A stretch of 64,000 nucleotides of DNA from positions 124,001 through 188,000 of IMG/VR virus record IMGVR_UViG_3300044625_001067. One strand, given 5' to 3'. Below the pieces are notes generated by a model. It was not told the origin of the DNA and did no database searches. It was given only the letters and a program-made list of their open reading frames with translations. This document shows, in pieces, positions 7,284-19,888 of this stretch. The translations under genes and the position numbers were made by a program. Positions within the stretch are counted from its first letter, which is position 1. Every line of letters begins with the position of its first letter.

Positions 7284-7289
7284 GCACTT

Positions 7290-9605: not shown

Positions 9606-9627
9606 TAGTTTTGCATTCGCAAAACAG

Positions 9628-9699: not shown

Positions 9700-9759
9700 T
9701 TAGAGCCGTTTCGTCTTATATAGACCCGGACGGACAGACCGGGTGGGGTATTTCCCGAG

Positions 9760-9832
9760 TGGAACCATGGGGTTACGATCCCCATACCCCCTGCTTGCAA
9801 AACAGGTGCTCTACCAATTGAGCTATGGCCCC
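9760..9832 (-). tRNA. trnA: tRNA-Ala (TGC), atypical T loop ATCGTAA
   Basis: G3:U70, loop TT-TGC-AA. Confidence 0.88.
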
Positions 9833-9878
9833 TTGCGCTAAGCGTGTAACTTAGGTGTTTTACCCTACTAGGGGCAAA

Positions 9879-9950
9879 TTGCTCTACCAGGAGTCGAACC
9901 TGGGTCTCCCCCCTTATAATGGGGGCGTCCTACCGTTAGACTATGGAGCG
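9879..9950 (-). tRNA. atypical tRNA with TAT (Ile) anticodon
   Basis: Cloverleaf with CCCCC-ATTATAA-GGGGG arm; C1:A72 and C6:A67 mismatches; D arm identical to the tRNA-Trp here. Confidence 0.75.
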
Positions 9951-10152
9951 GAGCTCTCTTTATGCTAACGACTGCCAATCGTTTCGCAGAGAGGGTTGTT
10001 TACTTGGCGAGTACTCAACCTGGGACTCTCACCCTTTTGCAAGGTTGTTAGTTTCCCTATGCTAAATCCAACTACTTTCAAGGTCGGTGAACTTAGGCAT
10101 TTTCGTCACTTGCTCGGCGAATCCAACCGCTCAGGGCCCATAGCGGTTGGTA

Positions 10153-10224
10153 TCGGAATGGCCGGGATCGAACCGACGACTTCTCGCCCCCCAGACGAGC
10201 GCTCTCCCTCTGAGCTACATTCCG
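10153..10224 (-). tRNA. trnP: tRNA-Pro (GGG)
   Basis: CGGAATG/CATTCCG, loop CT-GGG-GG. Confidence 0.92.
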
Positions 10225-10242
10225 TTATAGACCGTTTACCCG

Positions 10243-10335
10243 CCACGGTCAAGGGGATTTACTTAACTCTCCAGCTAAAACTGTGAGCAGTGTCGGCACC
10301 ACTTTCTAAGTCAGTTCCGAAGCTTGTAACCGTGG
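10243..10335 (-). ncRNA. candidate multibranch structured RNA
   Basis: CCACGGT/ACCGTGG plus CAAG/CTTG closing helix; inner ACTTA/TAAGT, AGTG/CACT and CTC-CAG/CTG-GAG helices. Confidence 0.45.
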
Positions 10336-10344
10336 GGTTAAACA

Positions 10345-10393
10345 AGATGATTGTTTTTCTACCAAAAAGAAATTTGTGAATCGCTGAATCATC
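10345..10393 (-). repeat. stem-closed CAGCGA loop element, copy 2
   Basis: Identical to copy 1. Confidence 0.8.
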
Positions 10394-10433
10394 TTCGAAA
10401 ATGCTATCGCATTTCTACCCTGTTAAGGGAAGA

Positions 10434-10505
10434 TCGGAAATCTCGGCATCGAACCGAGTACTCACGGGCTTCAACCGTGCGCTTTACCCTTCAAGCTCAT
10501 TTCCG
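10434..10505 (-). tRNA. trnF: tRNA-Phe (GAA), atypical (G8, G37)
   Basis: CGGAAAT/ATTTCCG, loop TT-GAA-GC. Confidence 0.85.
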
Positions 10506-10564
10506 TTGTGTCCCAGGTTTGAACCCCGGAAATTTATCACCTTGGGTGGTACCCCGAAGGCAAA

Positions 10565-10635
10565 CTGGGCGCACGGGACTCGAACCCGCAACCTTCCCCA
10601 TCTCAGAGGACGCTCTGCCATTGAGCTAGCACCCA
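10565..10635 (-). tRNA. tRNA, anticodon undetermined
   Basis: Good acceptor (TGGGTGC/GCGCCCA, G73), D and T arms; anticodon arm TCCTC-TGAGAT-GGGGA has a 6-nt loop. Confidence 0.7.
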
Positions 10636-10737
10636 AAACTCCCTAGCACAGTATCTGCAAATACCATTTTAAGGAGGGTTAAGCAATTGCAGTCGCTTCA
10701 CCTGGGGACTTTCACCCGTTTCCCCGGTGTGGGGTCA

Positions 10738-10808
10738 CGATCCTGAGGGGACTCGAACCCCCCTTCACCGGTAGACAGCCGGTGGCCTTCCCTGACGGCA
10801 ACAGGACC
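10738..10808 (-). tRNA. trnD: tRNA-Asp (GTC)
   Basis: GGTCCTG/CAGGATC, loop CT-GTC-TA, G73. Confidence 0.9.
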
Positions 10809-10859
10809 ATATTCCCGGAGTAAATCCGGGAGGGGCCAGGAAACCACTCCTGGACTTTT

Positions 10860-11050
10860 GCTGGGCTAGAGCACAAACCTCGCCCACAGTGAGTTATCGG
10901 CTCATGTCAGGTATCTCACTAACCTTGCACCCCGCTCTTTTTCGTACACGGGGAGTCCCTTGAGCTGGGCACGCTGTATCTTTCTGGTTAGGGGGCCAAC
11001 AGTGCCCTTGCCCGCTTTACTGTATTCCTGACACCGCAACGTGGCGGTCG
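10860..11050 (-). ncRNA. candidate pseudoknotted structured RNA (~190 nt)
   Basis: TGTCAGG/CCTGACA, GGGCAC/GTGCCC, CCCCG/CGGGG, crossing CTAACC/GGTTAG and AGTGAG/CTCACT, TGGGC/GCCCA; no ORF. Confidence 0.55.
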
Positions 11051-11074
11051 GTTCTTGCTTAAGCGTTGAGGCAA

Positions 11075-11148
11075 CACCCTGGGATGGAGTTGAACCATCG
11101 ATCTTCCGGTTCGTAGCCGGACGCTCTAGTCCACTGAGCTACCAGGGC
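11075..11148 (-). tRNA. trnR: tRNA-Arg (ACG)
   Basis: GCCCTGG/CCAGGGT, loop CT-ACG-AA. Confidence 0.93.
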
Positions 11149-11176
11149 ATTGTTTTAAGTTCCCGTTAAGAGAACA

Positions 11177-11258
11177 TACCGACCGAGAGACTCGAACTCT
11201 CACTCCTTTCGGAACCTGATTTTGAGTCAGGCGCGACTACCAATTCCGCCAGGCCGGC
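11177..11258 (-). tRNA. trnL: tRNA-Leu (CAA)
   Basis: GCCGGCC/GGTCGGT, loop CT-CAA-AA, long variable arm. Confidence 0.95.
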
Positions 11259-11333
11259 AATGTTTAAATTTTCAAGTTGCCCCGGAAAACCGGGTCGGGG
11301 GGTGAGAAACAAAGCTCTCTCAACCACTCCTTT

Positions 11334-11378
11334 AGTATAACCGGTTTCGCCGTGGGGCGAAAGGGCGGTTTACCGTCC
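11334..11378 (-). promoter_or_regulatory. promoter cassette heading a tRNA operon
   Basis: Dyad GGCGGTTTACCGTC, TTTCGC-17-TATACT, followed by conserved leader GGTGGTTG...GGCAACTTGAAAATTT. Confidence 0.85.
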
Positions 11379-11393
11379 CTTTGCTGGGGGTCT

Positions 11394-11564
11394 TCAGGTT
11401 AATACGGTGTCCCACACCACCCCAGTAACTGCATCGACAATGTAAATGTCCTCACCAGTTGAGCGGGAAATGTCGCGAGCTGCGTTTATTGCCTCGCCGT
11501 AGCTTGGGTAGCTTTCACCCCCAACAGAATCCCCGGTCACGGCTTTCTTGAGATAAAAGGTCAT
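11394..11564 (-). CDS. hypothetical protein
   Basis: MTFYLKKAV..., downstream of promoter 11588. Confidence 0.6.
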   Translation of the reverse strand: MTFYLKKAVTGDSVGGESYPSYGEAINAARDISRSTGEDIYIVDAVTGVVWDTVLT

Positions 11565-11587
11565 GAGTTTGTTCCGGCTACAGTGCA

Positions 11588-11636
11588 ATCATAGCGCCTT
11601 TCCACCGAAGAGTAAAGGGCGGGTGACCGAACCGCC
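11588..11636 (-). promoter_or_regulatory. repeated promoter cassette
   Basis: TTTACT-17-TATGAT with an adjacent degenerate dyad. Confidence 0.7.
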
Positions 11637-11715
11637 ACCCGAAATTTCTCTCAAGTAGCGGGGTTACGCACCTACTATAGTGCTACCCTGGCAAAGTAAA
11701 CGTGAAACACGCAGG

Positions 11716-11886
11716 TTAGAGGTAAGCGGAGCCAAGGATCACTTGTTCGCTCAGTTCATTAGTTCTCTTCAAGACTTGAGCAGCTTTTAGGAACTTTAAC
11801 GCCACTATGGGGTTAAGCCCACGAGATTGCTTGTACTTCCCCATTAAAGAAAGGTAAAGTTTTTCCGAGTTAGTTAATGTATTCAT
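11716..11886 (-). CDS. hypothetical protein
   Basis: MNTLTNSEKLYLSL..., ATG at 11886. Confidence 0.6.
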   Translation of the reverse strand: MNTLTNSEKLYLSLMGKYKQSRGLNPIVALKFLKAAQVLKRTNELSEQVILGSAYL

Positions 11887-11905
11887 GAGGGGTTCTTTAG
11901 AAGAC

Positions 11906-13066
11906 TTACACACCCTTGTATAGGAGGCTAACTAGATCTTTAGCGTCCGCTTCCGAAAGTTTGGACCAAGGGCCTTGCTCAAAAGTCTTGAGTGGGGATT
12001 GTGTACCATGCATATATAGGGCAACCACCTCGTCTTCTGACAAACCGAACTTTTCTTTTAGTTGCTTATCAACTTGAAACCTGTTTCTTCTAACAGTTCC
12101 CAGTATAGGAAGGTCTTCTTCCAACTTTTTCACGGAGGGCTTCATACTAGCTTTGTCTACTCTATGCATACCCATGACTTTCCACTCACGGGTTTGCCAA
12201 TTTCCGTAATTACCTAAAATAGCTCCTGTAGCATCCGCAGGAACTAGGGCTTCTGACCCTTTCCCGTGCTCCATGCCGGGGAAGTAGAAGGCACCAAGGG
12301 ACTCGGCCAAGGAAGCTTTAAAGCTTTGTTGGGAAAGCCCGAAGTCCACCCACCTCCCCTTTCCTGTCTTCTCTTCTACAAACAGGTTTCCTGGGTGTGC
12401 GTCGTTGTGAGCTACACCTAGTCGATGGAGGTCTGCCAAAGCTTTCCAATAAATATCGGCTGCAGGTGTGCCGGATACTTTTTGTTCGGGATTAGTAGCG
12501 AGAGACTCTATATCTCGCCCTGGAACTTTAGTCATGGCTATTCTACCGTGCCTCAACCCCAAGTGCTCCATGCCCATTTCGTCTGTTCCTTGAGTCTTCA
12601 ATCTGCCGTTTAAGTCAGCGGCTATTAAGTCCGGGCCGAGATCTTTAGCTCCTACTTTCTTTAAAATACTTGCCTCATTCTCTCCGAGAATTCCTCTCTT
12701 TATATATTGCCCCTTTTCGTTCACGGTTACGAACCCGTAAGCACCGCGTCCGGCCACCTGAGCTACGCTGCCTTTCTTGTCGGACCAGTCTTCAAAATCA
12801 GGGTTACCTGTTCTTTTGAGAATTTTGCTCTCAAGTTTTTTGTCATAACTATGCTCGTTGGACATATCCCAATCTTCTCGTCTTGTTGCGGTATCCTTGA
12901 TTTTATTAGTTTTATCTACGTCTTTCGTTGCATTACCAGAAAGTTTATCCTCAATGGAAATCAAAGACTTTGAAACTTGTGGACTAAGAGTTGCAGAACA
13001 CTTTTTAGAACTTTGAACACAGGATGCCCCACAACTCTTTCCGGCTTTACAATTCTTCTTAGTCAT
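11906..13066 (-). CDS. protein kinase-like protein with N-terminal Cys motif
   Basis: GRGAYG Gly loop, LHRLGVAHNDAHPGN catalytic loop, VDFGL; N-terminal CKAGKSCGASCVQSSKKC. Confidence 0.85.
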   Translation of the reverse strand: MTKKNCKAGKSCGASCVQSSKKCSATLSPQVSKSLISIEDKLSGNATKDVDKTNKIKDTATRREDWDMSNEHSYDKKLESKILKRTGNPDFEDWSDKKGSVAQVAGRGAYGFVTVNEKGQYIKRGILGENEASILKKVGAKDLGPDLIAADLNGRLKTQGTDEMGMEHLGLRHGRIAMTKVPGRDIESLATNPEQKVSGTPAADIYWKALADLHRLGVAHNDAHPGNLFVEEKTGKGRWVDFGLSQQSFKASLAESLGAFYFPGMEHGKGSEALVPADATGAILGNYGNWQTREWKVMGMHRVDKASMKPSVKKLEEDLPILGTVRRNRFQVDKQLKEKFGLSEDEVVALYMHGTQSPLKTFEQGPWSKLSEADAKDLVSLLYKGV

Positions 13067-13121
13067 GTGTGTTTGCGCCGATAGCTTAACTTACCCTTAC
13101 GAGTGATCTTTTAGTTCTGTA

Positions 13122-13192
13122 CACGTGGTAGAGGATTCGAACCCCTACGGGGAGTTTTGGAGACTCCAGTCCTACCGTTAGACGAACCACGT
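13122..13192 (-). tRNA. trnW: tRNA-Trp (CCA)
   Basis: ACGTGGT/ACCACGT, loop CT-CCA-AA. Confidence 0.92.
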
Positions 13193-13216
13193 AGGTTTGA
13201 GTTTCGCGTTAGCGAA

Positions 13217-13298
13217 AGCGGGTAACAGGATTCGAACCTGCGTGAACTATTCGCCTCTTGTTTGGAAAACAAGTGCTCTACCGCTGAGCTATACCCGC
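13217..13298 (-). tRNA. trnG: tRNA-Gly (TCC) with 15-nt variable arm
   Basis: GCGGGTA/TACCCGC, loop TT-TCC-AA, variable region AGGCGAATAGTTCAC. Confidence 0.9.
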
Positions 13299-13329
13299 AT
13301 TTTACTTGAGTTTTTTCGTGAGAGAAAAG

Positions 13330-13402
13330 AGCGGTCGACGTGACTCGAACACGCGACTTTCTACTTGGAAGGAAGACACTCTACCGACTGAGTTACGACC
13401 GC
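13330..13402 (-). tRNA. trnG: tRNA-Gly (TCC)
   Basis: GCGGTCG/CGACCGC, loop CT-TCC-AA. Confidence 0.9.
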
Positions 13403-13438
13403 ATTTTGCTTTAGTGTAATTTTCGCGTAAGCGAAAAG

Positions 13439-13511
13439 GGTGATAGACGGGACTCGAACCCGCTAATTACTGGTTCACAACCAGTTGCCCATCCCTTAGG
13501 CTTCTACCACC
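13439..13511 (-). tRNA. trnH: tRNA-His (GTG)
   Basis: Encoded G-1:C73 pair, loop TT-GTG-AA. Confidence 0.92.
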
Positions 13512-13542
13512 ATTGTAGGGGAGTTTCTGACTAATTTAAGCT

Positions 13543-13589
13543 AGATGATTGTGTTTCCAATAACGAAGGAGTTAATTGCTGAATCATCT
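13543..13589 (-). repeat. stem-closed CAGCAA loop element, copy 3 (diverged interior)
   Basis: Same AGATGATT-CAGC.A...AATCATCT frame with a different inner sequence. Confidence 0.7.
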
Positions 13590-13610
13590 ACTTTTCTGCA
13601 GAGCAGAAAA

Positions 13611-13684
13611 TGGCGGACCGGGGAATTGAACCCCTGTTCCTCTGGGTTATGGGCCCAGCGTGACTACCGTGACACTCGTCCGCG
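13611..13684 (-). tRNA. trnfM: initiator-type tRNA-fMet (CAT), C33
   Basis: Unpaired C1:C72, GGG/CCC anticodon stem, loop CC-CAT-AA. Confidence 0.82.
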
Positions 13685-13735
13685 TTACACCTATACTATA
13701 GCGTTTTTAGCTAGGAGTAAACTTCTCAAGGCAAG

Positions 13736-13806
13736 TTCCTAAGATAGGATTCGAACCTATATAATCTCCTTCAAAGGGAGGTGTCCTTCCGTTAGACGAC
13801 TCAGGA
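13736..13806 (-). tRNA. trnQ: tRNA-Gln (TTG)
   Basis: TCCTGAG/CTTAGGA (U1:A72), loop CT-TTG-AA. Confidence 0.88.
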
Positions 13807-13881
13807 TCGGCTGCCTTAAGTAGGGAGGCTATTATAGCCCCCTAAGATGAAAGTAAACTCTTGGCTAAGGTAGCAAGGAAA

Positions 13882-14000
13882 GGAGCAAGGTTGGACTTGA
13901 ACCAACGGCTTGCTTTGCCCTCCAGCGTTACGGTCCTTTACCGAGGGTCTCTTGCGAGACTCAGAGGAGGTTGCCGCTCTACCAACTGAGCTACTTGCTC
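13882..14000 (-). ncRNA. tRNA-like RNA A (anticodon arm replaced by branched domain)
   Basis: Perfect acceptor GAGCAAG/CTTGCTC, canonical D and T arms, ~65-nt insert with two hairpins. Confidence 0.8.
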
Positions 14001-14050
14001 TTTGCACCCTGAATTAAGTCAAGGAGCTAGAGTTCTCCGTAAAGAGAACA

Positions 14051-14132
14051 TACCCGCCGGGAGACTCGAACTCCCACGCCTTTCGGCACTAGTTCCTAAA
14101 ACTAGCGTATATACCAGTTTCACCAGGCGGGC
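14051..14132 (-). tRNA. trnL: tRNA-Leu (TAG)
   Basis: GCCCGCC/GGCGGGT, loop TT-TAG-GA. Confidence 0.94.
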
Positions 14133-14160
14133 TTGACTGTGATCCCTATGAAAGGGAAAG

Positions 14161-14232
14161 AGCGAACGAAGGGATTTGAACCCTCGACATTCTCGTTGGC
14201 AACGAGGTACTCTACCGCTGAGTTACGTTCGC
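14161..14232 (-). tRNA. trnG: tRNA-Gly (GCC)
   Basis: GCGAACG/CGTTCGC, loop TT-GCC-AA. Confidence 0.95.
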
Positions 14233-14274
14233 ATTGCTCCTTGGAGCAGTTTTCTTCTGCTTTTACAGAAGGTA

Positions 14275-14362
14275 CGGAGAGAACAGGAATCGAACCTGCG
14301 CAGGGGGTCTCCCCCCTGTAACCGTTTTCAAGACGGTCTCCTCGTCCAGCCGGACTCTCTCC
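14275..14362 (-). tRNA. trnS: tRNA-Ser (TGA), atypical D arm
   Basis: GGAGAGA/TCTCTCC, loop CT-TGA-AA, 7-bp variable stem with GAGA loop. Confidence 0.88.
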
Positions 14363-14411
14363 AGTTACCGTAGCACGGTAAGTTTTAGCTAGAAAACCGG
14401 AAGGTTTTCAA

Positions 14412-14570
14412 TGGGAAATGTTGGATTTGAACCAACGCTCTCTCAACTGATCAGGTTGTGAGCGTGCTGTTACAAAGGCGAAGGTCGGGGATCAATCCGC
14501 CATTCGACACTCGTACTGAAGCACTCACCTGGGTAATGTGCCCAGGGCTCTACCGCTGAGCTAATTTCCC
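14412..14570 (-). ncRNA. tRNA-like RNA B (~95-nt variable region)
   Basis: Acceptor GGGAAAT/ATTTCCC, canonical D and T arms, arm CCTGGG-CACATTA-CCCAGG, large structured insert. Confidence 0.8.
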
Positions 14571-14637
14571 GTTAACTCTGTTGACCGGAATTGAATCGGT
14601 CCCTGAACGTGCTGCCGTTTTTCTGCAAAGCAGAAAA

Positions 14638-14709
14638 TGGGGCATCTCGGATTCGAACCGAGGACTGACCGGTTAAAAGCCGGATACTCTACCGCTGAGT
14701 TAATGCCCC
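14638..14709 (-). tRNA. trnK: tRNA-Lys (TTT)
   Basis: GGGGCAT/ATGCCCC, loop CT-TTT-AA. Confidence 0.95.
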
Positions 14710-14792
14710 CCGTATTAAATTTTCAAGTTGCCTTTTGCTTTCGCAAAAGCGGGGAGGAGGTGAAGGCGAAGCCCTCTCTCAACCACCCCTTT

Positions 14793-14836
14793 AGTATAAC
14801 CGGTTTCGCCGAAAGGTGAAAGGGCGGGAAACCGCC
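14793..14836 (-). promoter_or_regulatory. promoter cassette heading a tRNA operon
   Basis: Dyad GGCGGGAAACCGCC, TTTCAC-17-TATACT, conserved leader. Confidence 0.85.
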
Positions 14837-14839
14837 GTA

Positions 14840-15064
14840 TCAAAGGGTGAACTCAAATACAACCTTGCGAACAAAGAAATCGTCAAGGTGCCCGTTGCCG
14901 TACATCCTGACGCAGTCCTGCAGCTTCGCAAGAATCTCGTCGTGGGTGGGAGCGGATGCCCCCTCTTCCAAAAGCTCGGTGAGTTCTCCAGCGATGGAGA
15001 CACAAAGTTCGTGCTCCTTACGAGCACTCAACCCTTTAAGGGTGCCGAAAGTTGCTTGAGCCAT
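14840..15064 (-). CDS. hypothetical protein, paralog of 8298..8537
   Basis: ATG 15064 (MAQATFGTLKGLSARKEHELCVSI). Confidence 0.8.
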   Translation of the reverse strand: MAQATFGTLKGLSARKEHELCVSIAGELTELLEEGASAPTHDEILAKLQDCVRMYGNGHLDDFFVRKVVFEFTL

Positions 15065-15095
15065 TTTGACTTGGAGGACCAACGGTAACAATTTA

Positions 15096-15161
15096 AGTTT
15101 AGCTGGTTTCACCGTGAAGCGAAAGGGTGGGAAACCGCCCCGGTTCGTTCGGTTAACTGAG
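15096..15161 (-). promoter_or_regulatory. repeated promoter cassette
   Basis: TTTCGC-17-TAAACT with dyads upstream. Confidence 0.7.
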
Positions 15162-15176
15162 CGAGTCACGGAGCAA

Positions 15177-15247
15177 AGCCCTGCCAGGGAATCGAACCCT
15201 GCTCTGCAGTTTACAAAACTGCTGCATCACCACAATGCTTGAAGGGC
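15177..15247 (-). tRNA. trnT: tRNA-Thr (TGT)
   Basis: Loop TT-TGT-AA; one acceptor mismatch. Confidence 0.85.
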
Positions 15248-15277
15248 ATTTTCCTTGTAGTTCTTCGGGGAGAACAA

Positions 15278-15366
15278 CGGAAGATGTGAGATTCGAACTC
15301 ACGGAGCTGCTTGCGCAGCTCAACGGTTTAGCAAACCGTCGCCTTCAACCACTCGGCCAATCTTCC
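15278..15366 (-). tRNA. trnS: tRNA-Ser (GCT)
   Basis: GGAAGAT/ATCTTCC, loop TT-GCT-AA, long variable arm. Confidence 0.94.
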
Positions 15367-15386
15367 AAAATTTCTCGTTAGAGAAA

Positions 15387-15459
15387 TTGCCCCAACCGGA
15401 TTCGAACCGGTATTTCCACCTTGAGAGGGTAGCGACCTAAGCCATTAGTCGATGAGGCC
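15387..15459 (-). tRNA. trnE: tRNA-Glu (CTC)
   Basis: Loop CT-CTC-AA, G1:A72 mismatch. Confidence 0.88.
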
Positions 15460-15496
15460 GTTTTCTGCGAAAAACAGAGAGTTTGCTTAAGCAAAG

Positions 15497-15569
15497 TAGG
15501 AATGACAGGATTCGAACCTGTGTATCTCGGTAATCGGCCGAAGGTATTAGGCCACTATACGACATTCTC
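15497..15569 (-). tRNA. trnI: atypical tRNA-Ile (GAT), C33/U37
   Basis: Loop CC-GAT-TA, weak acceptor end. Confidence 0.7.
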
Positions 15570-15630
15570 AGAAAACGAGCAGTTACGTATGATGCTCAGC
15601 ACAGGTTCCCCAGCAAAAGGGCTGAGAGGA

Positions 15631-15702
15631 TGGGAGCACTCGGGAACGACCCGAGGGCCTTTTCCGTGTCAAAGAAACGCTCTACCACTGAGCTATGCTC
15701 CC
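15631..15702 (-). tRNA. trnV: tRNA-Val (GAC), atypical T loop GTCGTTC
   Basis: GGGAGCA/TGCTCCC, loop TT-GAC-AC. Confidence 0.87.
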
Positions 15703-15813
15703 AACCGGAGCAGTCACGCTCCGTACCTAGTTTCCTATAATTGCCTACTCGTGTCATCGCGGAAGTTGACGAAACTTCTAGAACTTTCGGCTCAAGTGGT
15801 GTTAGGCACCTGA

Positions 15814-15968
15814 TTAAAGTGGAGAGACTCGAACTCCCATAGCAGGATTACGTCTAGCTGTCACCTGCACGGTGGTTGCAACCATGAGCTAGGAGGTTGC
15901 TATTTGTTCACAACCCCATCCGTATTGGCTGAATCCACACCGCCGTATACCAATTCCGGCACACTTTG
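15814..15968 (-). ncRNA. tRNA-like RNA C (Leu-type body, expanded anticodon and variable arms)
   Basis: AAAGTG/CACTTT acceptor, Leu-type D arm CCG-GAATTGGTATA-CGG, T arm GGGAG-TTCGAGT-CTCTC, ~65-nt insert closed by GGTG/CACC, GCAGG/CCTGC variable stem. Confidence 0.78.
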
Positions 15969-16027
15969 TTCTTAGCGTTTGAGGAGAACCTGAAGTAGGT
16001 CCCTCTTCTTTCTCTCTGTAAGAGAAA

Positions 16028-16100
16028 CTGGAGTGGGAGGGTTCGAACCTCCAACGAAGCGGTTAACAGCCGCACGATCTGCCAATTGATCTACACCCCA
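16028..16100 (-). tRNA. trnN: tRNA-Asn (GTT)
   Basis: TGGGGTG/CACTCCA, loop CT-GTT-AA. Confidence 0.92.
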
Positions 16101-16252
16101 TTGAGCCCTGCATTACGGCAGAGGGTACTAAGAAGCACTCCGGGGTCGCGAGCGTCCCCATACGAGTAGGAATCGTTACTGAAACCGGTTATTACTGTCC
16201 CTTAAGTTGCAAACCGACAACCTCGCTTAAGGAATTTTCGCGAGTGCGAAAA

Positions 16253-16325
16253 TGGAGACAATCGGAATTGAACCGATCACAAGTCGCTTGCGAAGCGTCC
16301 TCGCCACCCTGGAACATGTGCCCCC
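16253..16325 (-). tRNA. trnA: tRNA-Ala (CGC), atypical D arm
   Basis: G3:U70, loop TT-CGC-AA. Confidence 0.8.
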
Positions 16326-16431
16326 GTTTTCCTATCGGAAAACAAAAGTTAGCCGATAGGGGACAGAGCGTCTCACCTCTGCGAGGAACGTTTCAGTTCG
16401 TTTTCCCCTTAGGGAAGTTGCCCGAAGGCAA

Positions 16432-16504
16432 TGGGTTTGGTGGGATTCGAACCCACAACATACCGGGTAAGAGCCGGTTACTCTGCCAATTGAGCTACAA
16501 ACCC
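16432..16504 (-). tRNA. trnK: tRNA-Lys (CTT)
   Basis: GGGTTTG/CAAACCC, loop CT-CTT-AC. Confidence 0.94.
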
Positions 16505-16567
16505 GAACCCCAAGTTTAGAAAGCACCATCGCAGGTACTTGGGCAACCTTTTTCGCTAACGCGAAAA

Positions 16568-16640
16568 TGGGAACGGCCTGATTTGAACAGGCGGCCTATC
16601 GGTTATCAACCGATTGCTCTTACCGCTGAGCTACGCTCCC
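16568..16640 (-). tRNA. trnI: tRNA-Ile (GAT)
   Basis: GGGAGCG/CGTTCCC, loop TT-GAT-AA. Confidence 0.93.
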
Positions 16641-16715
16641 TTGGTACTAAATTGTCAAGTTGCCCCCCGGAAACCGGGTCAGTAAGGAAAGCGGAAGCTT
16701 TCCAACCACCCCTTT

Positions 16716-16759
16716 AGTATAACCGGTTTTGCCGTAGGGCGAAAGGGCGGTTTACCGCC
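16716..16759 (-). promoter_or_regulatory. promoter cassette heading a tRNA operon
   Basis: Dyad GGCGGTTTACCGCC, TTTCGC-17-TATACT, conserved leader. Confidence 0.85.
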
Positions 16760-16817
16760 CCCTTCACCCCTGGTCAACATTGAAGTATTCACTCAGGAAT
16801 GCTTGCGTAAGCAAACA

Positions 16818-16892
16818 TGGCGAGAGGCAGGATTTGAACCTGCGATCTCCAGCTTATGAGACTGGCGAGATACCGGGCTTCTCCACTCCGCT
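16818..16892 (-). tRNA. trnM: tRNA-Met (CAT)
   Basis: Loop CT-CAT-AA; acceptor needs a 1-nt bulge. Confidence 0.82.
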
Positions 16893-16948
16893 ATAAAGAC
16901 CTAGTATTTCAGTTCGGTTTTCGTTTTACGAAAAATGCCCAAGGGCAA

Positions 16949-17056
16949 TGGGTATGGACAGGATTCGAACCTGCAATGCCAGAGGCGACTGCTGTACTTA
17001 CAGCCCACTATTCCCAAGAACCGTGTACACAATTCCTGCTTCAGTGAGACATACCC
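16949..17056 (-). ncRNA. tRNA-like RNA D (Tyr-derived, expanded D arm, 4-nt anticodon loop)
   Basis: GGGTATG/CATACCC acceptor, T arm GCAGG-TTCGAAT-CCTGT, long hairpin in the D position, GCTGT-AAGT-ACAGC arm, GCC-TCT-GGC variable arm. Confidence 0.72.
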
Positions 17057-17079
17057 GTGAAGTTTCCGATAGGAAACAA

Positions 17080-17162
17080 TGGGAGCGGTAGGATTCGAAC
17101 CTACGAAGCATTGAGCAACCGGGTTACAGCCGGTCTCCTTTGACCACTCGGAGAACACTCCC
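17080..17162 (-). tRNA. trnY: tRNA-Tyr (GTA)
   Basis: GGGAGTG/CGCTCCC, loop CT-GTA-AC. Confidence 0.93.
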
Positions 17163-17169
17163 ATTTTGC

Positions 17170-17358
17170 TCTGCAGACACTGCTTTGGGTTGAGCCACCC
17201 CCTACTTTGTATCTCTAAAGTAGTAAAATAGGTTCTTCTAATTGCGGTTTTAACCGCATAACGAGAGAAGTTTTTGGATTTCGAAGAAACCTTTGCACCC
17301 CTTAAACTACCCAAGCATGGAGCTCAGGGGCTGAGTCGAACAGCCATTTCTCTCTTTT
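17170..17358 (-). ncRNA. possible circularly permuted tRNA-like/tmRNA-like element
   Basis: Orphan T arm GGCTG-TTCGACT-CAGCC followed by ...GAGCTCCA; downstream GGGGTGCAAAGGTTTC and several hairpins. Confidence 0.35.
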
Positions 17359-17377
17359 ATTTTCGCGTGAGCGAAAA

Positions 17378-17458
17378 TGGGTCAGGTGGGACTCGAACCC
17401 ACGGTGTTTGTATATCCGGTTAAAAGCCGGGACCTGTCGCCGCTAAGGTAACTGACCC
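17378..17458 (-). tRNA. trnK: atypical tRNA-Lys (TTT) with 12-nt variable loop
   Basis: GGGTCAG/CTGACCC, loop CT-TTT-AA, variable TATACAAACACC. Confidence 0.8.
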
Positions 17459-17533
17459 ATGGTGTTAAATTGTCAAGTTGCCTCCCGCAAGAGCGGAAGC
17501 GAGGCGGAAGCCGAGCTTCCCAACCACCCCTTT

Positions 17534-17576
17534 ACTATAGCGTTTTTCACCGGGCAAGTAAAGCGGGGAAACCGCC
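17534..17576 (-). promoter_or_regulatory. promoter cassette heading a tRNA operon
   Basis: TTTACT-17-TATAGT, dyad, conserved leader. Confidence 0.85.
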
Positions 17577-17616
17577 CTCTTGAACCCCCAGTCGCAAGCT
17601 AGCTTAGCGCACCCTC

Positions 17617-17850
17617 TCAAAAGTAAACCTTTTTAAGGCTGTCGAATACTTCTGCAATCTCGGTGAATCCTAGATAGCGAACGAAGTCCACAAGGAGACC
17701 GTCGGCTTTCACGTGGTCACTCTTTATGTCCCCGATCGTATTTACTTCTTGACTCTCTCTAATCTGATTCAAGTCTTTCAGTGTCTGTTGGGCTTTGAGA
17801 AAGTTTTCAACTTTCTGCTCAATTAAGTAACGTTCGGTATGGTCTTCCAT
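17617..17850 (-). CDS. hypothetical protein
   Basis: 77 aa ORF. Confidence 0.7.
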   Translation of the reverse strand: MEDHTERYLIEQKVENFLKAQQTLKDLNQIRESQEVNTIGDIKSDHVKADGLLVDFVRYLGFTEIAEVFDSLKKVYF

Positions 17851-17884
17851 AATTCTCGCGTGGTTTGCGTAAAGTGAGTATAGG

Positions 17885-18040
17885 TCAGTAACCAGCTTTC
17901 TCTAGAGCTTCGCGTACCCTGTCGATTTCGTCGTCCCAAGCGTACATTCCATCTAAGCTGACTAGCCTTGCGGTCAAGGCATCAAAAGCCAGCAAAATCT
18001 CTTTGCTGTCACGTTCGTTAGCTTTGGTTTCGTTGGACAT
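17885..18040 (-). CDS. hypothetical protein
   Basis: ATG 18040 (MSNETKANE) downstream of promoter 18066. Confidence 0.6.
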   Translation of the reverse strand: MSNETKANERDSKEILLAFDALTARLVSLDGMYAWDDEIDRVREALEKAGY

Positions 18041-18065
18041 GGCGTTGACGGGTTTGACTGTGGTA

Positions 18066-18109
18066 ACTATAGCGGTTTTCACAGGGGAAGTAAAGCCGGG
18101 AAACCGCCC
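18066..18109 (-). promoter_or_regulatory. repeated promoter cassette
   Basis: TTTACT-17-TATAGT, dyad GCCGGGAAACCGCC. Confidence 0.85.
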
Positions 18110-18116
18110 TGCTAGC

Positions 18117-18518
18117 TCAGTTCCAGGGTGCAAACAATTCGCCGCTCCCGTACCCAGTTAGCGTATTCATTACTCGACCCCACCACGAGGTTCTTCGATT
18201 AAGGACTCTGCGTGCCTGGGCGTAAGAGACGGAGGGCACGGATACCTCCGTGACACCGTTGTTCGAGCGAAAGGAAACCCAGTGTCCCACCCACTTCCAA
18301 GGGCTAACCAGAACTGCGTCCCCGTTGCTGCCAAGGTAAGCACTCTCACAGAAGACTATATAAGAGTATTCTCCTACTTCTTCGCCTGTCTCAGGGTGAT
18401 TGAAGTGTGTGGTCACCGTAACCTGCTTGTCTGAGTGATTGTCAATCGAAAACAATGTAGTTTTCTCGATGAGCGAAGGTTTTGTGGAGAACATTGGTTT
18501 GCTTGTGTGTACTAACAA
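18117..18518 (-). CDS. hypothetical protein
   Basis: 133 aa ORF; alternative ATG at 18494. Confidence 0.7.
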   Translation of the reverse strand: MLVHTSKPMFSTKPSLIEKTTLFSIDNHSDKQVTVTTHFNHPETGEEVGEYSYIVFCESAYLGSNGDAVLVSPWKWVGHWVSFRSNNGVTEVSVPSVSYAQARRVLNRRTSWWGRVMNTLTGYGSGELFAPWN

Positions 18519-18524
18519 TGGAGG

Positions 18525-18713
18525 TTAGACTCCGAACTTAACCTTCTCAACTTCGAACCAGTCCCCGTCGTCTTCTGGAGGTTCATTCGGTAAGCCAAGG
18601 TTGAAGCCAGCTGTCAAAGCAGAGACCTCAGTTGAATGGGCAGAGACGAGTCGGCTTTTCCGAATGTCAAAGTCTCCCCATCTGAAAATTAGGAGGACGA
18701 AAATGTGGTCCAT
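18525..18713 (-). CDS. hypothetical protein
   Basis: ATG 18713 (MDHIFVLLIF) downstream of promoter 18740. Confidence 0.6.
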   Translation of the reverse strand: MDHIFVLLIFRWGDFDIRKSRLVSAHSTEVSALTAGFNLGLPNEPPEDDGDWFEVEKVKFGV

Positions 18714-18739
18714 TGTGAGCTGGTGATACTTGCCTTTAA

Positions 18740-18783
18740 AGTATACCGTGTCTGCCGAGCAGGAACAAGGGCGGGAAACCGCC
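18740..18783 (-). promoter_or_regulatory. repeated promoter cassette
   Basis: TTGTTC-17-TATACT, dyad GGCGGGAAACCGCC. Confidence 0.85.
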
Positions 18784-18819
18784 CTTAACGGGACTGTCAA
18801 CCCTACAACCCGTACAAGC

Positions 18820-19260
18820 TTACGGCATTGTGCGATTGAAAAAGTCGTAGCCAGGGTAGTCTCCTCCCCAACTGAAAAATTCGTAAGTGATGTCCTTAAA
18901 CTTCCGGGTACTCGCCAGCTTCTGGTCAATAGACCAGCCGTATTGAAGAAGATTGTAAAGGCTCCTGGCGAACCCTTGATGGAGTCTCAGGAGAAAAACT
19001 GCCTCGTCCGTTCCTTGAACCTTACGAACTTTCCACAGGGCTTTTAGTAGCTTTTCGCACGCCTCATAGAGAACTTTAAACCGTCTTTTCTTACCTACAG
19101 GAAAAATCTTGTACTTTTCGTAGTTTGCTTCCGCCTCAATTACGTCTGCGTGGGCAGTCTCAAAGTCTAGGTCGTTGTCAGCAACCATGAAGAAATTCCC
19201 TGAGACAATCCCACCAGAGCACTCTGTTGGCAGAGCGATGGTGTCGTAGTTGATTTTCAT
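18820..19260 (-). CDS. hypothetical protein
   Basis: ATG 19260 (MKINYDTIAL). Confidence 0.7.
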   Translation of the reverse strand: MKINYDTIALPTECSGGIVSGNFFMVADNDLDFETAHADVIEAEANYEKYKIFPVGKKRRFKVLYEACEKLLKALWKVRKVQGTDEAVFLLRLHQGFARSLYNLLQYGWSIDQKLASTRKFKDITYEFFSWGGDYPGYDFFNRTMP

Positions 19261-19305
19261 GGTTAAATTCGGAGTTTCCAGGGACAAGGTGTAAACTGAG
19301 TCGAG

Positions 19306-19476
19306 TTAAAGCATTGGGAGGGGTTTCAACAGGACCCCGTCGTACCCCTCATCGGTAAGCTCCTGCCGGTACGCTTCAGCGTCCCTCTTATGCACAAAAA
19401 GACGCAGACGGGAATCTTCGAAACCAAAGGAGTCAACAAACCCGTAAGGTTCGATCATTACCGCAAAAACTTCCAT
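19306..19476 (-). CDS. small hypothetical protein (56 aa)
   Basis: Manual translation MEVFAVMIEPYGF...KPLPML; directly after promoter 19515; below the ORF-track cutoff. Confidence 0.6.
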   Translation of the reverse strand: MEVFAVMIEPYGFVDSFGFEDSRLRLFVHKRDAEAYRQELTDEGYDGVLLKPLPML

Positions 19477-19514
19477 GTCCTTTTCCCTGAGGGGCGGTGT
19501 TGCCCTGTGTGTAT

Positions 19515-19579
19515 ATTATAGCGTTTCTGCCGAGCAAACCAAGCTGGAAAACCGCCTTATGGGGGTAGGGTTTACCGCC
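19515..19579 (-). promoter_or_regulatory. repeated promoter cassette (last minus-strand copy)
   Basis: TATAAT, TTGGTT (16-bp spacing), two dyads. Confidence 0.75.
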
Positions 19580-19592
19580 CTTTACGCAGTAA

Positions 19593-19888
19593 AGACCGCC
19601 CTCTTTACATGGAAACACGGAAGGCACTGTTGAGGCTCCAGTCACGAACGCCGAAGGAGACGATCTTGACGACTTGACGAGCTGGGGGAATACGACGGTG
19701 AGAAGGATGGGGTGTGGTCGGACCAGGACCCTAAGTTTGATGGGGTGAACGTTGAGTCCACACACTCCCTGGCGAAGCTACTCACATCAAGTGTTATGGA
19801 GCCTATCATGGAGATCATGTTCGGTTCTGACAACGTCATAGTTGCGACTCGTGCCGGATTTAGTGTAGACCAAGCGGACCACGACTGA
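19593..19888 (+). pseudogene. 5'-truncated, frameshifted remnant of a phage hypothetical gene
   Basis: Startless frames ...LHGNTEGTVEAPVTNAEGDDLDD and, shifted, LDELGEYDGEKDGVW...MFGSDNVIVATRAGFSVDQADHD*; protein-like acidic composition. Confidence 0.45.

What the first reader, a model, noticed from the sequence alone, without database searches (positions are those of the whole stretch)
13882..17056. Family of four tRNA-scaffolded RNAs, each with a different arm replaced by a large folded domain
Four elements in the tRNA operons keep a well-paired acceptor stem and a canonical T arm, and three also keep a normal D arm, but they are 108-159 nt long. A (13882-14000) has a branched domain in place of the anticodon arm. 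B (14412-14570) has a ~95-nt variable region. C (15814-15968) has expanded anticodon and variable arms. D (16949-17056) has an expanded D arm. The inserts are mutually unrelated, strongly paired and free of ORFs. Established: RNase P, RNase Z and CCA-adding enzyme recognise the acceptor/T elbow, and T4 encodes stable tRNA-like RNAs of unknown function (species I/II) in its tRNA cluster. Inference: the phage uses tRNA maturation to release stable RNAs with custom domains, e.g. anticodon-nuclease decoys, ribosome or synthetase ligands, or aptamer scaffolds. This is my best candidate for an undescribed system.
Basis: partly seen in the sequence, partly recalled or inferred. Interest (0 to 1): 0.88.

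Follow-up and report, generated by a model that had tools for sequence, protein, structure and literature searches.

The report
Phage tRNA-shaped RNAs with extra domains
Three of the four over-long tRNA-like genes in this phage's tRNA cluster are conserved structured RNAs built on a tRNA frame (one also lies unannotated in the cultured cyanophage S-CRM01), so they are real phage RNAs of unknown function; the fourth is a one-off.

Summary
All four elements exist as described, on the minus strand inside the tRNA array of a 277-kb phage contig. ARAGORN and Rfam miss them at default settings. A and B reach 45 bits on the tRNA model only with permissive filters.

A, C and D each have homologues in tRNA arrays of distantly related freshwater phages. 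Compensatory changes support their added helices:
- C: 11 sequences, 24 of 42 pairs compensated, including a pseudoknot.
- D: 9 sequences, 15 of 34 pairs.
- A: 4 sequences, 7 of 22 pairs.

C is also present, unannotated, in Synechococcus phage S-CRM01. B has no homologue and is missing from the closest related array.

They are not one family. D is a tRNA-Tyr paralogue (GUA anticodon, C37) with an optional D-loop hairpin. C is tRNA-Leu-like with a rebuilt anticodon arm. A has no anticodon loop. None matches a group I intron or any other Rfam family.

All four carry the same 3' hairpin as the true tRNAs, and no CCA is encoded. Co-transcription and release by tRNA-maturation enzymes is therefore plausible, but inferred. 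Function is unknown; I favour tRNA mimicry, with low confidence.

The closest known case is T4 species 1 RNA. I class this as a new variant of a known kind, of moderate to high interest.

The parts
13882..14000 (-). Element A: 119-nt tRNA-like RNA. It has an acceptor stem, D arm and T arm. The anticodon loop is replaced by a 5-bp stem carrying two hairpins.
   Evidence: RF00005 45.4 bits, only with permissive filters. Homologues at L060:5240-5358 (91%), L059:252-361 (88%) and, more distantly, L022:19165-19263. 22 pairs, 7 compensated.
13947..13960 (-). A, hairpin P1 (GUCUC-GCAA-GAGAC). Its sequence is hypervariable but it is always paired. It is absent in the distant homologue.
   Evidence: The stem is GCUUUC/GAAAGC in L060 and GACUUU/AAAGUC in L059. 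It is missing in L022.
13931..13943 (-). A, hairpin P2 (CGGU-AAAGG-ACCG), followed 3' by the conserved UAACGC segment.
   Evidence: Invariant in window, L060 and L059. A recognisable counterpart exists in L022.
13910..13923 (-). A, 3' strand of the 5-bp stem (GGAGG; it pairs with CCUCC at 13966-13970), plus the conserved 9-nt GMAAAGCAW segment.
   Evidence: The stem is CCCGC/GCGGG in L022, a compensated change.
14412..14570 (-). Element B: 159-nt tRNA-like RNA. It has an acceptor stem, D arm, an anticodon-like arm and T arm, with 91 nt between the anticodon arm and the T arm.
   Evidence: RF00005 44.8 bits with permissive filters. Whole-molecule fold z = -3.97. No homologue was found. Its 5' 28 nt are 93% identical to tRNA-Val(UAC) at 7985-8056.
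14528..14546 (-). B, anticodon-like arm: 6-bp stem and loop CACAUUA (CAU flanked by A33 and U37, which is non-canonical).
   Evidence: Sequence. The stem resembles that of the weak tRNA(CAU) at 13611-13684.
14437..14527 (-). B, 91-nt insert in the variable region, predicted to form two hairpin domains.
   Evidence: MFE fold only; z = -1.82. No comparative support.
15814..15968 (-). Element C: 155-nt RNA with a tRNA-Leu-like D arm and T arm, a three-tier extended anticodon arm and a long variable arm.
   Evidence: 11 homologues, including S-CRM01 NC_015569 135449-135597. 42 pairs, 96.8% paired, 24 compensated, 0 of 500 shuffles as good. No member matches any Rfam family.
15870..15942 (-). C, extended anticodon-arm domain: three stacked helices separated by two large conserved internal loops.
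   Evidence: Helices 3-5; compensated pairs in each.
15887..15892 (-). C, pseudoknot 5' strand CUAGCU, in the internal loop of the anticodon-arm domain.
   Evidence: It pairs with 15854-15859. The pair becomes CUGGCU/AGCCAG in L059 and L062, an A-U to G-C change.
15842..15868 (-). C, variable arm. Its loop holds the invariant ACAGCUAGACGUAA, including the pseudoknot 3' strand AGCUAG at 15854-15859.
   Evidence: All 5 stem pairs are compensated (helix 7). The loop is invariant apart from the covarying position.
16949..17056 (-). Element D: 108-nt tRNA-Tyr paralogue with a hairpin in the D loop, GUA in the anticodon loop with C37, a class II variable arm, and an extra C between the T stem and the acceptor.
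   Evidence: 9 homologues. 34 pairs, 98.3% paired, 15 compensated, 0 of 500 shuffles as good. Aligns with the window's tRNA-Tyr genes.
17015..17038 (-). D, 24-nt hairpin inserted in the D loop before G18G19. Its apex is a 6-nt palindrome (UGUACA).
   Evidence: 8 of 9 pairs are compensated (helix 3). The hairpin is absent from the L059 and L060 homologues. The apex is palindromic in 7 of 7 hairpin-bearing homologues.
16988..17004 (-). D, anticodon arm. The loop is AAGUACA here and NUGUACA in most homologues.
   Evidence: GUA in 8 of 9 and C37 in 8 of 9. L026 has GUU with A37.
16925..16948 (-). 3' hairpin directly after D. Equivalent hairpins follow A (13858-13881), B (14388-14411) and C (15790-15813).
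   Evidence: Such a hairpin follows 25 of 34 true tRNAs and 6 of 6 odd elements, against 117 of 500 random 24-mers.
14793..14820 (-). Promoter-like repeat (TTCACC, 16 nt, TATACT) upstream of the Lys-B-Ser-Gly-Leu-A block. Similar copies lie at 17534-17562 and 18066-18094.
   Evidence: Consensus scan. Part of repeat families D3-D5. Conserved in related arrays.

Best explanation
The four loci are genes for tRNA-derived RNAs that lie among the true tRNA genes on the same strand.

Shown:
- A, C and D belong to three separate families, each conserved in the tRNA arrays of a group of freshwater, probably cyanobacterial, phages.
- In each family the extra helices are kept by compensatory substitution.
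- The parts of a tRNA that make the L-shaped elbow (D-loop GG and T loop) and the T arm are retained in all four.
- The anticodon loop is either gone (A, C) or non-canonical (B has A33/U37; D has C37).
- No CCA is encoded, and each element is followed by the same short hairpin as the true tRNAs.

Inferred:
- They are co-transcribed with the tRNAs.
- In this phage they are cut out by RNase P at the 5' end and by the tRNA 3'-end pathway, with CCA then added. This would give stable RNAs of 108-159 nt.
- They do not decode. Instead they act as tRNA mimics that occupy proteins which recognise tRNA shape, such as host tRNA-targeting defence nucleases or modification and charging enzymes.
- D keeps every TyrRS identity element and may be charged. 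It may be a nuclease-evading or non-decoding tRNA-Tyr variant.
- B may be a recent, possibly non-functional, derivative.
For: Existence and tRNA derivation.

Conservation across phages whose neighbouring kinase-like protein is only about 45-57% identical.

Covariation:
- C: 24 of 42 pairs compensated, 96.8% paired, 0 of 500 shuffles as good, slid controls 31-53% paired.
- D: 15 of 34 pairs, 98.3% paired, 0 of 500.
- A: 7 of 22 pairs.
- C pseudoknot: one compensated pair.

Selection on the RNAs: between distant arrays, only the tRNAs, the promoters, C, D and one other non-coding block align. Spacers do not.

C lies in an unannotated gap between tRNA-Ala and tRNA-Val of the cultured phage S-CRM01.

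Shared punctuation and no encoded CCA. Promoter-like repeats are present, and terminator-like sites are no more frequent than in shuffled sequence.

No group I intron or any other Rfam family matches.

Precedent: T4 rnaC has a T arm, a weak acceptor and a large interior.
Against: - There are no expression, end-mapping or charging data. Processing and function are inference only.
- B has no homologue and is absent from the closest related array (L060, 90-96% identical).
- P1 of A and the D-loop hairpin of D are missing in some homologues, so those domains are not essential.
- In most C homologues the terminal helix is 8-10 bp, or 4 bp plus an internal loop plus 5-9 bp. RNase P/Z-type release at tRNA ends is therefore not general for C.
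- The inserts fold no better than shuffled sequence.
- D could simply be a working tRNA-Tyr.
- The perfect palindromy of the D hairpin could be kept by template-switch mutation rather than by selection on the RNA.
- The sequence samples are small (4-11) and partly closely related.
Confidence: 0.6

Rival explanations
1. They are intron-containing tRNA genes. The inserts are spliced out to give ordinary decoding tRNAs, for example A giving tRNA-Arg(CCU) and B giving tRNA-Val(CAC) or a CAU tRNA.
For:
- Many single deletions give ARAGORN-acceptable tRNAs for A and B.
- The window has no Arg(CCU) or Arg(UCU) tRNA, whereas relatives do.
- Related contigs carry a tRNA_lig_CPD-domain gene near their arrays.
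- D homologues without the hairpin exist.
Against: - No group I intron or other ribozyme family matches, even at E up to 5-10.
- The inserts are 24-91 nt, below the size of any known self-splicing intron. Bacteria have no known protein-only tRNA splicing pathway (established knowledge).
- ARAGORN's solutions for A and B give 88- and 81-nt products with unexpected long variable regions, and pyrimidine 37 in A.
- No deletion gives a tRNA for D, and almost none does for C.
- Insert sequences and a pseudoknot are conserved in C, which is unexpected for a spacer to be discarded.
- D without its hairpin is still non-canonical (C37, extra C) and is still not called by ARAGORN.
Confidence: 0.07
2. They are decaying or insertion-scarred tRNA pseudogenes, by-products of recombination and palindrome insertion in a fast-changing tRNA array, with no function of their own.
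For: - B is a singleton and is absent from the closest relative.
- B looks chimeric: its 5' end is Val-like and its anticodon stem resembles that of the weak tRNA(CAU) at 13611-13684.
- The hairpins in A and D come and go.
- These arrays hold many other odd tRNA-likes, some with duplicated T arms.
- The whole array is a variable module, missing from otherwise near-identical phages.
Against: - A, C and D are kept over deep divergence, while the spacers around them are not alignable.
- They keep 97-98% pairing and many compensated pairs.
- C has 14-nt invariant loop sequences and occurs outside tRNA arrays and in a different phage family.
- This rival remains reasonable for B alone (about 0.4 for B).
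Confidence: 0.1
3. They are working tRNAs with tolerated expansions. D is a tyrosine tRNA and B a CAU (Met or Ile2) tRNA. They are charged and used on the ribosome, perhaps altered to escape anticodon nucleases.
For: - D keeps G1-C72, A73, G34-U35-A36 and a class II variable arm like the neighbouring tRNA-Tyr.
- G18G19 are retained next to the hairpin, and the insert sits in the variable alpha region of the D loop.
- B has a complete anticodon arm with CAU and three G-C pairs.
Against: - Pyrimidine 37 is conserved in D (8 of 9), and the window copy also has A33. B has A33 and U37. U33 and purine 37 are near-universal in decoding tRNAs (established knowledge).
- A and C have no anticodon loop at all.
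- Canonical tRNA-Tyr genes sit beside D in several arrays, so D is not needed to supply Tyr decoding.
- D has an extra nucleotide at the T-stem/acceptor junction in all 9 copies.
Confidence: 0.15
4. The perfectly palindromic hairpin in D, and similar palindrome-tipped hairpins, act at the DNA level (a protein-binding site, a cruciform, or a small mobile palindrome). They merely sit in a tolerant loop of a tRNA-like gene.
For: - The apex of the D-loop hairpin is a 6-nt palindrome in all 7 hairpin-bearing homologues, with 5 different sequences. A hairpin selected only as RNA does not need a self-complementary loop.
- Several copies are perfect 18-22-nt DNA palindromes.
- The hairpin is present or absent between close relatives (window versus L060).
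Against: - The hairpins are homologous across lineages, share their basal sequences, and always sit at the same D-loop position. This speaks against repeated insertion.
- The stems of the window and L061/L062 copies contain G-U pairs, which are mismatches at the DNA level.
- The explanation does not cover A, B or C.
Confidence: 0.08

Closest known systems
Bacteriophage T4 species 1 and species 2 stable RNAs (rnaC, rnaD)
   Same: Both are encoded in the phage tRNA cluster on the tRNA strand. rnaC (139 nt) has a canonical T arm, a weak terminal acceptor-like helix and a large folded interior. Its biological role is unknown (PMC3014915).
   Different: There is no sequence similarity: T4 was not hit by A, C, D or X in the phage collection. 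rnaC has no recognisable D arm and rnaD no T arm. A-D keep far more of the tRNA, and each traces to a particular tRNA type (Tyr, Leu, Val-like).
Engineered tRNA scaffolds for expressing recombinant RNA in E. coli (anticodon arm replaced by a cargo RNA; own knowledge)
   Same: A and C have the same design: acceptor, D and T arms kept, and the anticodon stem continued into an unrelated structured domain. In the engineered case this gives processing and stability through the tRNA machinery.
   Different: These are natural, conserved and phage-encoded. The cargo in C also interacts with the variable arm through a pseudoknot. Processing was not shown here.
YrlA / bacterial Y RNAs (Rfam RF02553)
   Same: They are non-coding RNAs that contain a tRNA-like elbow module, and some are phage-encoded. 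S-CRM01 has a sub-threshold YrlA-like match in the same array (L069:2774-2888, 35.9 bits).
   Different: In YrlA the RNA ends form the Ro-binding stem at the anticodon side, and the acceptor is closed by a loop. Here the ends form the acceptor or terminal helix. The Rfam score at the window loci is only 14.5 bits against a threshold of 69.
tmRNA tRNA-like domain, including cyanobacterial two-piece tmRNA
   Same: It has an acceptor and T arm with the anticodon arm replaced by a long helix leading to other domains. It is present in related phage contigs (L027 RF01851 81 bits; L055).
   Different: A-D have full D arms, no tag reading frame and no tmRNA pseudoknot series. ARAGORN and Rfam find no tmRNA in the window.
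Naturally non-canonical tRNAs (for example 8/4 and 9/3 acceptor/T-stem tRNAs, PMC5389517) and class II tRNAs with long variable arms
   Same: D and B could be viewed as extreme structural variants of tRNAs. D has a class II variable arm and an odd acceptor/T junction.
   Different: Known variants keep a canonical anticodon loop and do not carry a 24-nt helix in the D loop or a 91-nt variable region. The 8/4 and 9/3 pairings do not fit D (inspection).
Candidate structured RNAs catalogued in IMG/VR (PMC10690425)
   Same: That survey reports tRNA-like candidates in phage contigs. Some of these families may be among its 8,495 unnamed models.
   Different: No description of these architectures was found there. 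I could not check the survey's models against these sequences.

Membership tests
Canonical tRNA (Rfam RF00005) | 7-bp acceptor stem stacked on a 5-bp T stem, with a GTTCRANYC-type T loop | tested here: met
   A and B are perfect. C has 6 of 7 pairs (C1xA72). D has 7 bp plus one extra C at the junction, in all 9 homologues.
Canonical tRNA (Rfam RF00005) | 5-bp anticodon stem with a 7-nt loop carrying U33 and purine 37 | tested here: not met
   A and C have no such loop. B's loop is CACAUUA (A33, U37). D's loop is AAGUACA here and NUGUACA in homologues, with C37 in 8 of 9.
Canonical tRNA (Rfam RF00005) | Length of about 70-95 nt and detection by standard tRNA finders | tested here: not met
   Lengths are 108-159 nt. 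ARAGORN makes no default call and Rfam makes none at gathering thresholds with default filters. A and B reach 45 bits only with permissive filters, through a local gap.
tRNA gene with a group I intron (as in cyanobacterial tRNA-Leu and tRNA-fMet) | Group I catalytic core (Rfam Intron_gpI), typically at least about 200 nt, inserted in the anticodon loop | tested here: not met
   No intron or ribozyme family matches at E up to 5-10 in 13500-17500. The inserts are 24-91 nt, and those of B and D lie outside the anticodon loop.
tRNA gene with an intron (any kind) | Removing one contiguous segment restores a canonical cloverleaf with a normal anticodon loop | tested here: inconclusive
   Deletion scan with ARAGORN: many permissive solutions for A and B but with odd features, 4 of 1219 for C, and none for D. 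ARAGORN is lenient, so this is weak evidence either way.
Archaeal-type tRNA intron (bulge-helix-bulge) | A 3-4-3 bulge-helix-bulge motif at both junctions and a splicing endonuclease in the host or virus | not tested
   No formal motif search was run. The sigma-70-like promoters, the cyanobacterial tmRNA in a relative and the S-CRM01 host point to bacterial hosts, which lack this pathway (established knowledge).
T4 rnaC-type stable RNAs of phage tRNA clusters | Encoded inside the tRNA cluster on the tRNA strand, with a T arm and a terminal helix enclosing a large non-tRNA interior | tested here: met
   for A-D; for rnaC.
T4 rnaC-type stable RNAs of phage tRNA clusters | Sequence homology to rnaC or rnaD | tested here: not met
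   Searches of the phage collection with A, C, D and X hit no T4-like record except S-CRM01, and that hit was for C itself.
T4 rnaC-type stable RNAs of phage tRNA clusters | Accumulates as a stable RNA processed from the tRNA precursor by RNase P | not testable with these tools
   This needs RNA from infected cells. Only context is available: the shared 3' hairpin and no encoded CCA.
tmRNA | tRNA-like domain without a D stem, plus a tag reading frame and pseudoknots | tested here: not met
   ARAGORN and Rfam find no tmRNA in the window. A-C have full D arms.
YrlA / Y RNA | Match to RF02553; RNA ends forming the Ro-binding stem, with the tRNA-like module internal | tested here: not met
   The best match is 14.5 bits against a threshold of 69, and it only partly overlaps A. 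The topology is the opposite: here the ends form the acceptor.

The most novel reading that the evidence does not exclude
A group of freshwater (cyano)phages carries a toolkit of several independently evolved RNAs displayed on tRNA frames: families A, C, D, X and others. These exploit the host tRNA-maturation pathway for release and stability. Their added domains are functional ligands, for example decoys or inhibitors of tRNA-targeting defence nucleases or other tRNA-binding host proteins. C would be a new pseudoknotted RNA class with a specific partner.
Probability: 0.25. Interest if true: 0.85.

Novelty: new variant of a known kind. Interest (0 to 1): 0.62.

Why it matters
Phage tRNA clusters are usually read only as codon-supply or anti-defence tRNA sets, and standard annotation skips anything that is not a clean cloverleaf. 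These arrays also hold conserved, covariation-supported RNAs built on tRNA frames. They match no Rfam family, and one lies unannotated in a cultured cyanophage.

This gives natural counterparts of the engineered tRNA scaffold. It also gives relatives in kind for the T4 species 1 RNA, whose role is still unknown. Finally, it offers a tractable system (S-CRM01 on Synechococcus LC16) for asking what such RNAs do. If they prove to be decoys for tRNA-targeting immunity, they would be a new class of RNA-based counter-defence.

Tried and rejected
1. Close relatives found through the Tet/JBP gene (L003-L015). They share DNA only to the right of window 19642 and carry no tRNAs, so they were useless for comparison.
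2. The kinase-like protein as a single query found only the window's own contig. An alignment of its homologues was needed.
3. The first metagenome scan for D used a wrong gap length (6-9 instead of 5-6) and found nothing. It was corrected.
4. The genome-contig scan for C used too loose a pattern. Nothing can be said about presence in bacterial genomes.
5. The B-specific scan of viral contigs found only the window's own contig.
6. The deletion scan with ARAGORN to test for hidden introns was too permissive to decide.
7. Folding energies of the inserts alone are unremarkable.
8. A search for a protein gene consistently next to C found none.
9. Pfam scans of the ORFs inside the array and of the larger window ORFs found no RNA ligase, splicing endonuclease, CCA enzyme or aaRS in the window.
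10. Known families considered and rejected: hammerhead, twister and other small ribozymes, group I introns, tmRNA, YrlA, riboswitches. None has a significant Rfam match.
11. 8/4 or 9/3 cloverleaf pairings for D do not fit, by inspection.
12. Literature searches found no description of these elements.

Full report
**Source and setting.** The window comes from IMG/VR contig IMGVR_UViG_3300044625_001067, 277 kb. It carries 34 ARAGORN tRNA genes, all on the minus strand, between 660 and 17459. To the right lie genes for DNA hypermodification (two Tet/JBP oxygenases, a TET-associated glycosyltransferase, an ATP-grasp enzyme), a topoisomerase, a family A polymerase and a sheath protein.

The host is probably a cyanobacterium, for four reasons:
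- The promoter-like repeats are sigma-70-like.
- One window protein matches DUF1517 at 1.3e-54. To my knowledge, not checked here, this family is found in cyanobacteria and plants.
- A related contig has a cyanobacterial two-piece tmRNA.
- One of the RNA families also occurs in Synechococcus phage S-CRM01.

**Observation.** None of the four loci is called by ARAGORN or by Rfam at gathering thresholds. With permissive filters, A and B match the tRNA model end to end at 45 bits, with 59 and 100 nt where 13 are expected. C and D match nothing.

- **A** has acceptor, D and T arms. After two G-C pairs and an asymmetric internal loop, a 5-bp stem (CCUCC/GGAGG) carries two hairpins instead of an anticodon loop.
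- **B** has acceptor, D arm, a 6-bp anticodon-like stem with loop CACAUUA, then 91 nt, then the T arm.
- **C** has a tRNA-Leu-type D arm and T arm, a three-tier extended anticodon arm and a long variable arm.
- **D** aligns with the window's tRNA-Tyr genes. It has a 24-nt hairpin in the D loop just before the GG, the loop AAGUACA, and one extra C between the T stem and the acceptor.

The inserts alone do not fold better than shuffled sequence (z -0.3 to -1.8).

**Finding relatives.** Phages nearly identical to the right of position 19642 have no tRNA array at all, so the array is a variable module. Relatives came from three routes:
- homologues of the kinase-like ORF at 11906-13066;
- DNA patterns taken from the first alignments;
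- the GenBank phage collection.

The most useful locus is L060, an 11-kb lake-metagenome contig with the same array at 90-96% identity.

**Family C.** Eleven sequences were collected. They include four IMG/VR contigs outside the kinase-bearing group and S-CRM01, where the element lies in an unannotated 376-nt gap between tRNA-Ala and tRNA-Val on the tRNA strand.

On the 11-sequence alignment, a structure of 42 pairs is 96.8% paired. Twenty-four pairs are compensated, no shuffle of 500 does as well, and slid controls are only 31-53% paired.

Two invariant stretches are complementary: CUAGCU in an internal loop and AGCUAG in the variable-arm loop. In L059 and L062 both change together, to CUGGCU and AGCCAG. 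This is one compensated event in favour of a pseudoknot.

The terminal helix varies. It is 7 bp and tRNA-like in the window's clade. Elsewhere it is 8-10 bp continuous, or 4 bp plus an internal loop plus 5-9 bp. No member matches any Rfam family. No protein gene is consistently adjacent.

**Family D.** Nine distinct sequences were collected. The 34-pair structure is 98.3% paired, with 15 compensated pairs and 0 of 500 shuffles as good.

All copies keep G1-C72, a class II variable arm and the extra C. A73 and GUA are present in 8 of 9; the exception is L026, which has GUU and G73. C37 is also present in 8 of 9.

The D-loop hairpin is compensated at 8 of 9 pairs. It is absent from L059 and from the close relative L060, so it is dispensable. 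Its apex is a 6-nt palindrome in all seven hairpin-bearing copies, with five different sequences. I cannot explain this.

Canonical tRNA-Tyr genes sit next to D in several arrays.

**Family A.** Homologues exist in L060 (91%) and L059 (88%). A distant one in L022 has the stem as CCCGC/GCGGG and lacks hairpin P1.

P1 has a different sequence in each close relative yet is always paired. P2 and the 3' segment GMAAAGCAW are conserved. Seven of 22 pairs are compensated. The discriminator base differs (C or U), so a fixed aminoacylation identity is unlikely.

**Element B.** No homologue was found by BLAST in any locus or by a pattern scan of IMG/VR. In L060, tRNA-Lys and tRNA-Ser are 24 nt apart where the window has B. 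Its 5' end is 93% identical to tRNA-Val(UAC). Its anticodon stem resembles that of the weak tRNA(CAU) at 13611-13684. B is clearly tRNA-derived, but there is no evidence that its insert is under selection.

**Context.** No tRNA or element encodes CCA. A short hairpin starts within 5 nt of the 3' end of 25 of 34 tRNAs and of all six odd elements, against 117 of 500 random 24-mers. Promoter-like repeats precede blocks of genes, and terminator-like sites are no more frequent than in shuffled sequence. Between distant arrays only the tRNAs, the promoters, C, D and one further non-coding block align.

**What they are not.**
- *Introns.* There is no group I or ribozyme match. The inserts are too small. 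Excision does not restore a normal anticodon arm in A or C. C's interior is conserved. D without its hairpin is still non-canonical.
- *Ordinary decoders.* The anticodon loops are absent or break the U33 and purine-37 rules.
- *tmRNA or YrlA*.
- *Junk, for A, C and D,* given their conservation and covariation. This remains possible for B.

**Mechanism.** The genes, the structures and their conservation are shown. Co-transcription with the tRNAs and release by RNase P and the tRNA 3'-end pathway with CCA addition are inferred. This is plausible for the window's copies, which have tRNA-type ends, but it is not general for C.

Function is also inferred. I favour tRNA mimicry, meaning occupation of proteins that read tRNA shape. 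This could include host tRNA-targeting defence nucleases. D might be a chargeable but non-decoding, or nuclease-evading, tRNA-Tyr variant. My confidence is about 0.8 in the structural and genic part and about 0.25 in the functional part.

**Comparison and novelty.** The closest known case is T4 rnaC. It lies in the tRNA cluster, has a T arm, a weak acceptor and a large interior, and its role is unknown (PMC3014915). There is no sequence homology.

A and C are natural counterparts of engineered tRNA scaffolds (own knowledge). A large survey lists unnamed tRNA-like candidates in IMG/VR (PMC10690425), and I could not check for overlap. Literature searches found no description of these families.

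I class the finding as a new variant of a known kind, with C as a new structured RNA class.

**Limits.**
- The samples are small and partly related.
- One metagenome scan was wasted on a wrong gap.
- The genome scan was too loose, so occurrence in bacterial genomes is unknown.
- No transcript data exist.

Noticed in passing
window 10805-11075 (minus strand): A non-coding stretch of about 270 nt between tRNA-Asp and tRNA-Arg is conserved in L060, L056 and L026. RNAalifold gives 47 pairs, 9 of them compensated. There is no Rfam match at gathering thresholds. It is a further candidate structured RNA in the array.
   Followed up: partly
window 16253-16325 (minus strand): A weak tRNA-like gene (RF00005 26.6 bits, below threshold; not called by ARAGORN) with a 7-bp acceptor and a T arm. 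It is 97-99% conserved in L060, L062 and L063 and is followed by the usual 3' hairpin.
   Followed up: partly
window 13611-13684 (minus strand): A tRNA(CAU) found only by Rfam (31.2 bits). Its anticodon loop is CCCAUAA (C33 instead of U33), and the anticodon stem has three consecutive G-C pairs, as in initiator tRNAs. It is identical in L060.
   Followed up: no
L021:1189-1314 (same contig as the window, outside it); L027:8723-8845; L061:68-192: A fifth tRNA-ended family ('X', 123-126 nt) with a core of about 70 nt that is nearly invariant across 88-94% identical copies in three contigs. It has no Rfam match and no match in GenBank phages.
   Followed up: partly
window 17015-17038 and homologues (L022, L026, L052, L056, L061, L062): The apex of the D-loop hairpin is always a 6-nt palindrome (UGUACA, GGGCCC, UGCGCA, GGAUCC, CGGCCG), and several hairpins are perfect 18-22-nt DNA palindromes. 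The D anticodon loop (UGUACA) and a loop in B's insert (UGAUCA) are also palindromic. Unexplained.
   Followed up: partly
window 660-17459: Nearly every tRNA gene is followed within 0-5 nt by a short U-led hairpin (25 of 34, against 23% of random 24-mers), and none encodes CCA. This looks like a regular punctuation of the array.
   Followed up: yes
window 1-19642: The whole tRNA-bearing left part is missing from contigs that are 91-96% identical to the right of 19642 (L003, L005, L007). L060 carries the array up to the same breakpoint. The array behaves as a swappable module.
   Followed up: partly
window 11906-13066 (minus strand): A protein-kinase-fold ORF (weak Pkinase/ABC1/APH matches) sits inside the tRNA array. 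Homologues sit in or beside tRNA arrays of several other phage contigs, some of which (L022, L025, L055) also carry a tRNA_lig_CPD-domain gene. It is absent from L060. A second paralogue lies elsewhere in the same contig as L041.
   Followed up: partly
L022:7528-7616; L056:1104-1223; L027:7203-7346; L065:3381-3485; L066:7119-7245: Related arrays hold further odd tRNA-likes. Some have two T-arm-like hairpins or inserts of 30-70 nt. Some are conserved between contigs: L027 elements recur in L061, and an L057 element recurs in L061.
   Followed up: no
L069:2774-2888 (S-CRM01 NC_015569 about 132222-132336); L027:14586-14818: S-CRM01 has a sub-threshold YrlA (Y RNA-like) match, 35.9 bits, in its tRNA array. 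L027 carries a cyanobacterial-type permuted tmRNA, 81 bits.
   Followed up: no
window 21739-29500 (plus strand): A DNA hypermodification cluster: two Tet/JBP oxygenases, a 3'-5' exoribonuclease-like protein, an R2K ATP-grasp enzyme, a TET-associated glycosyltransferase, a nucleotidyltransferase and an APH-like kinase.
   Followed up: no
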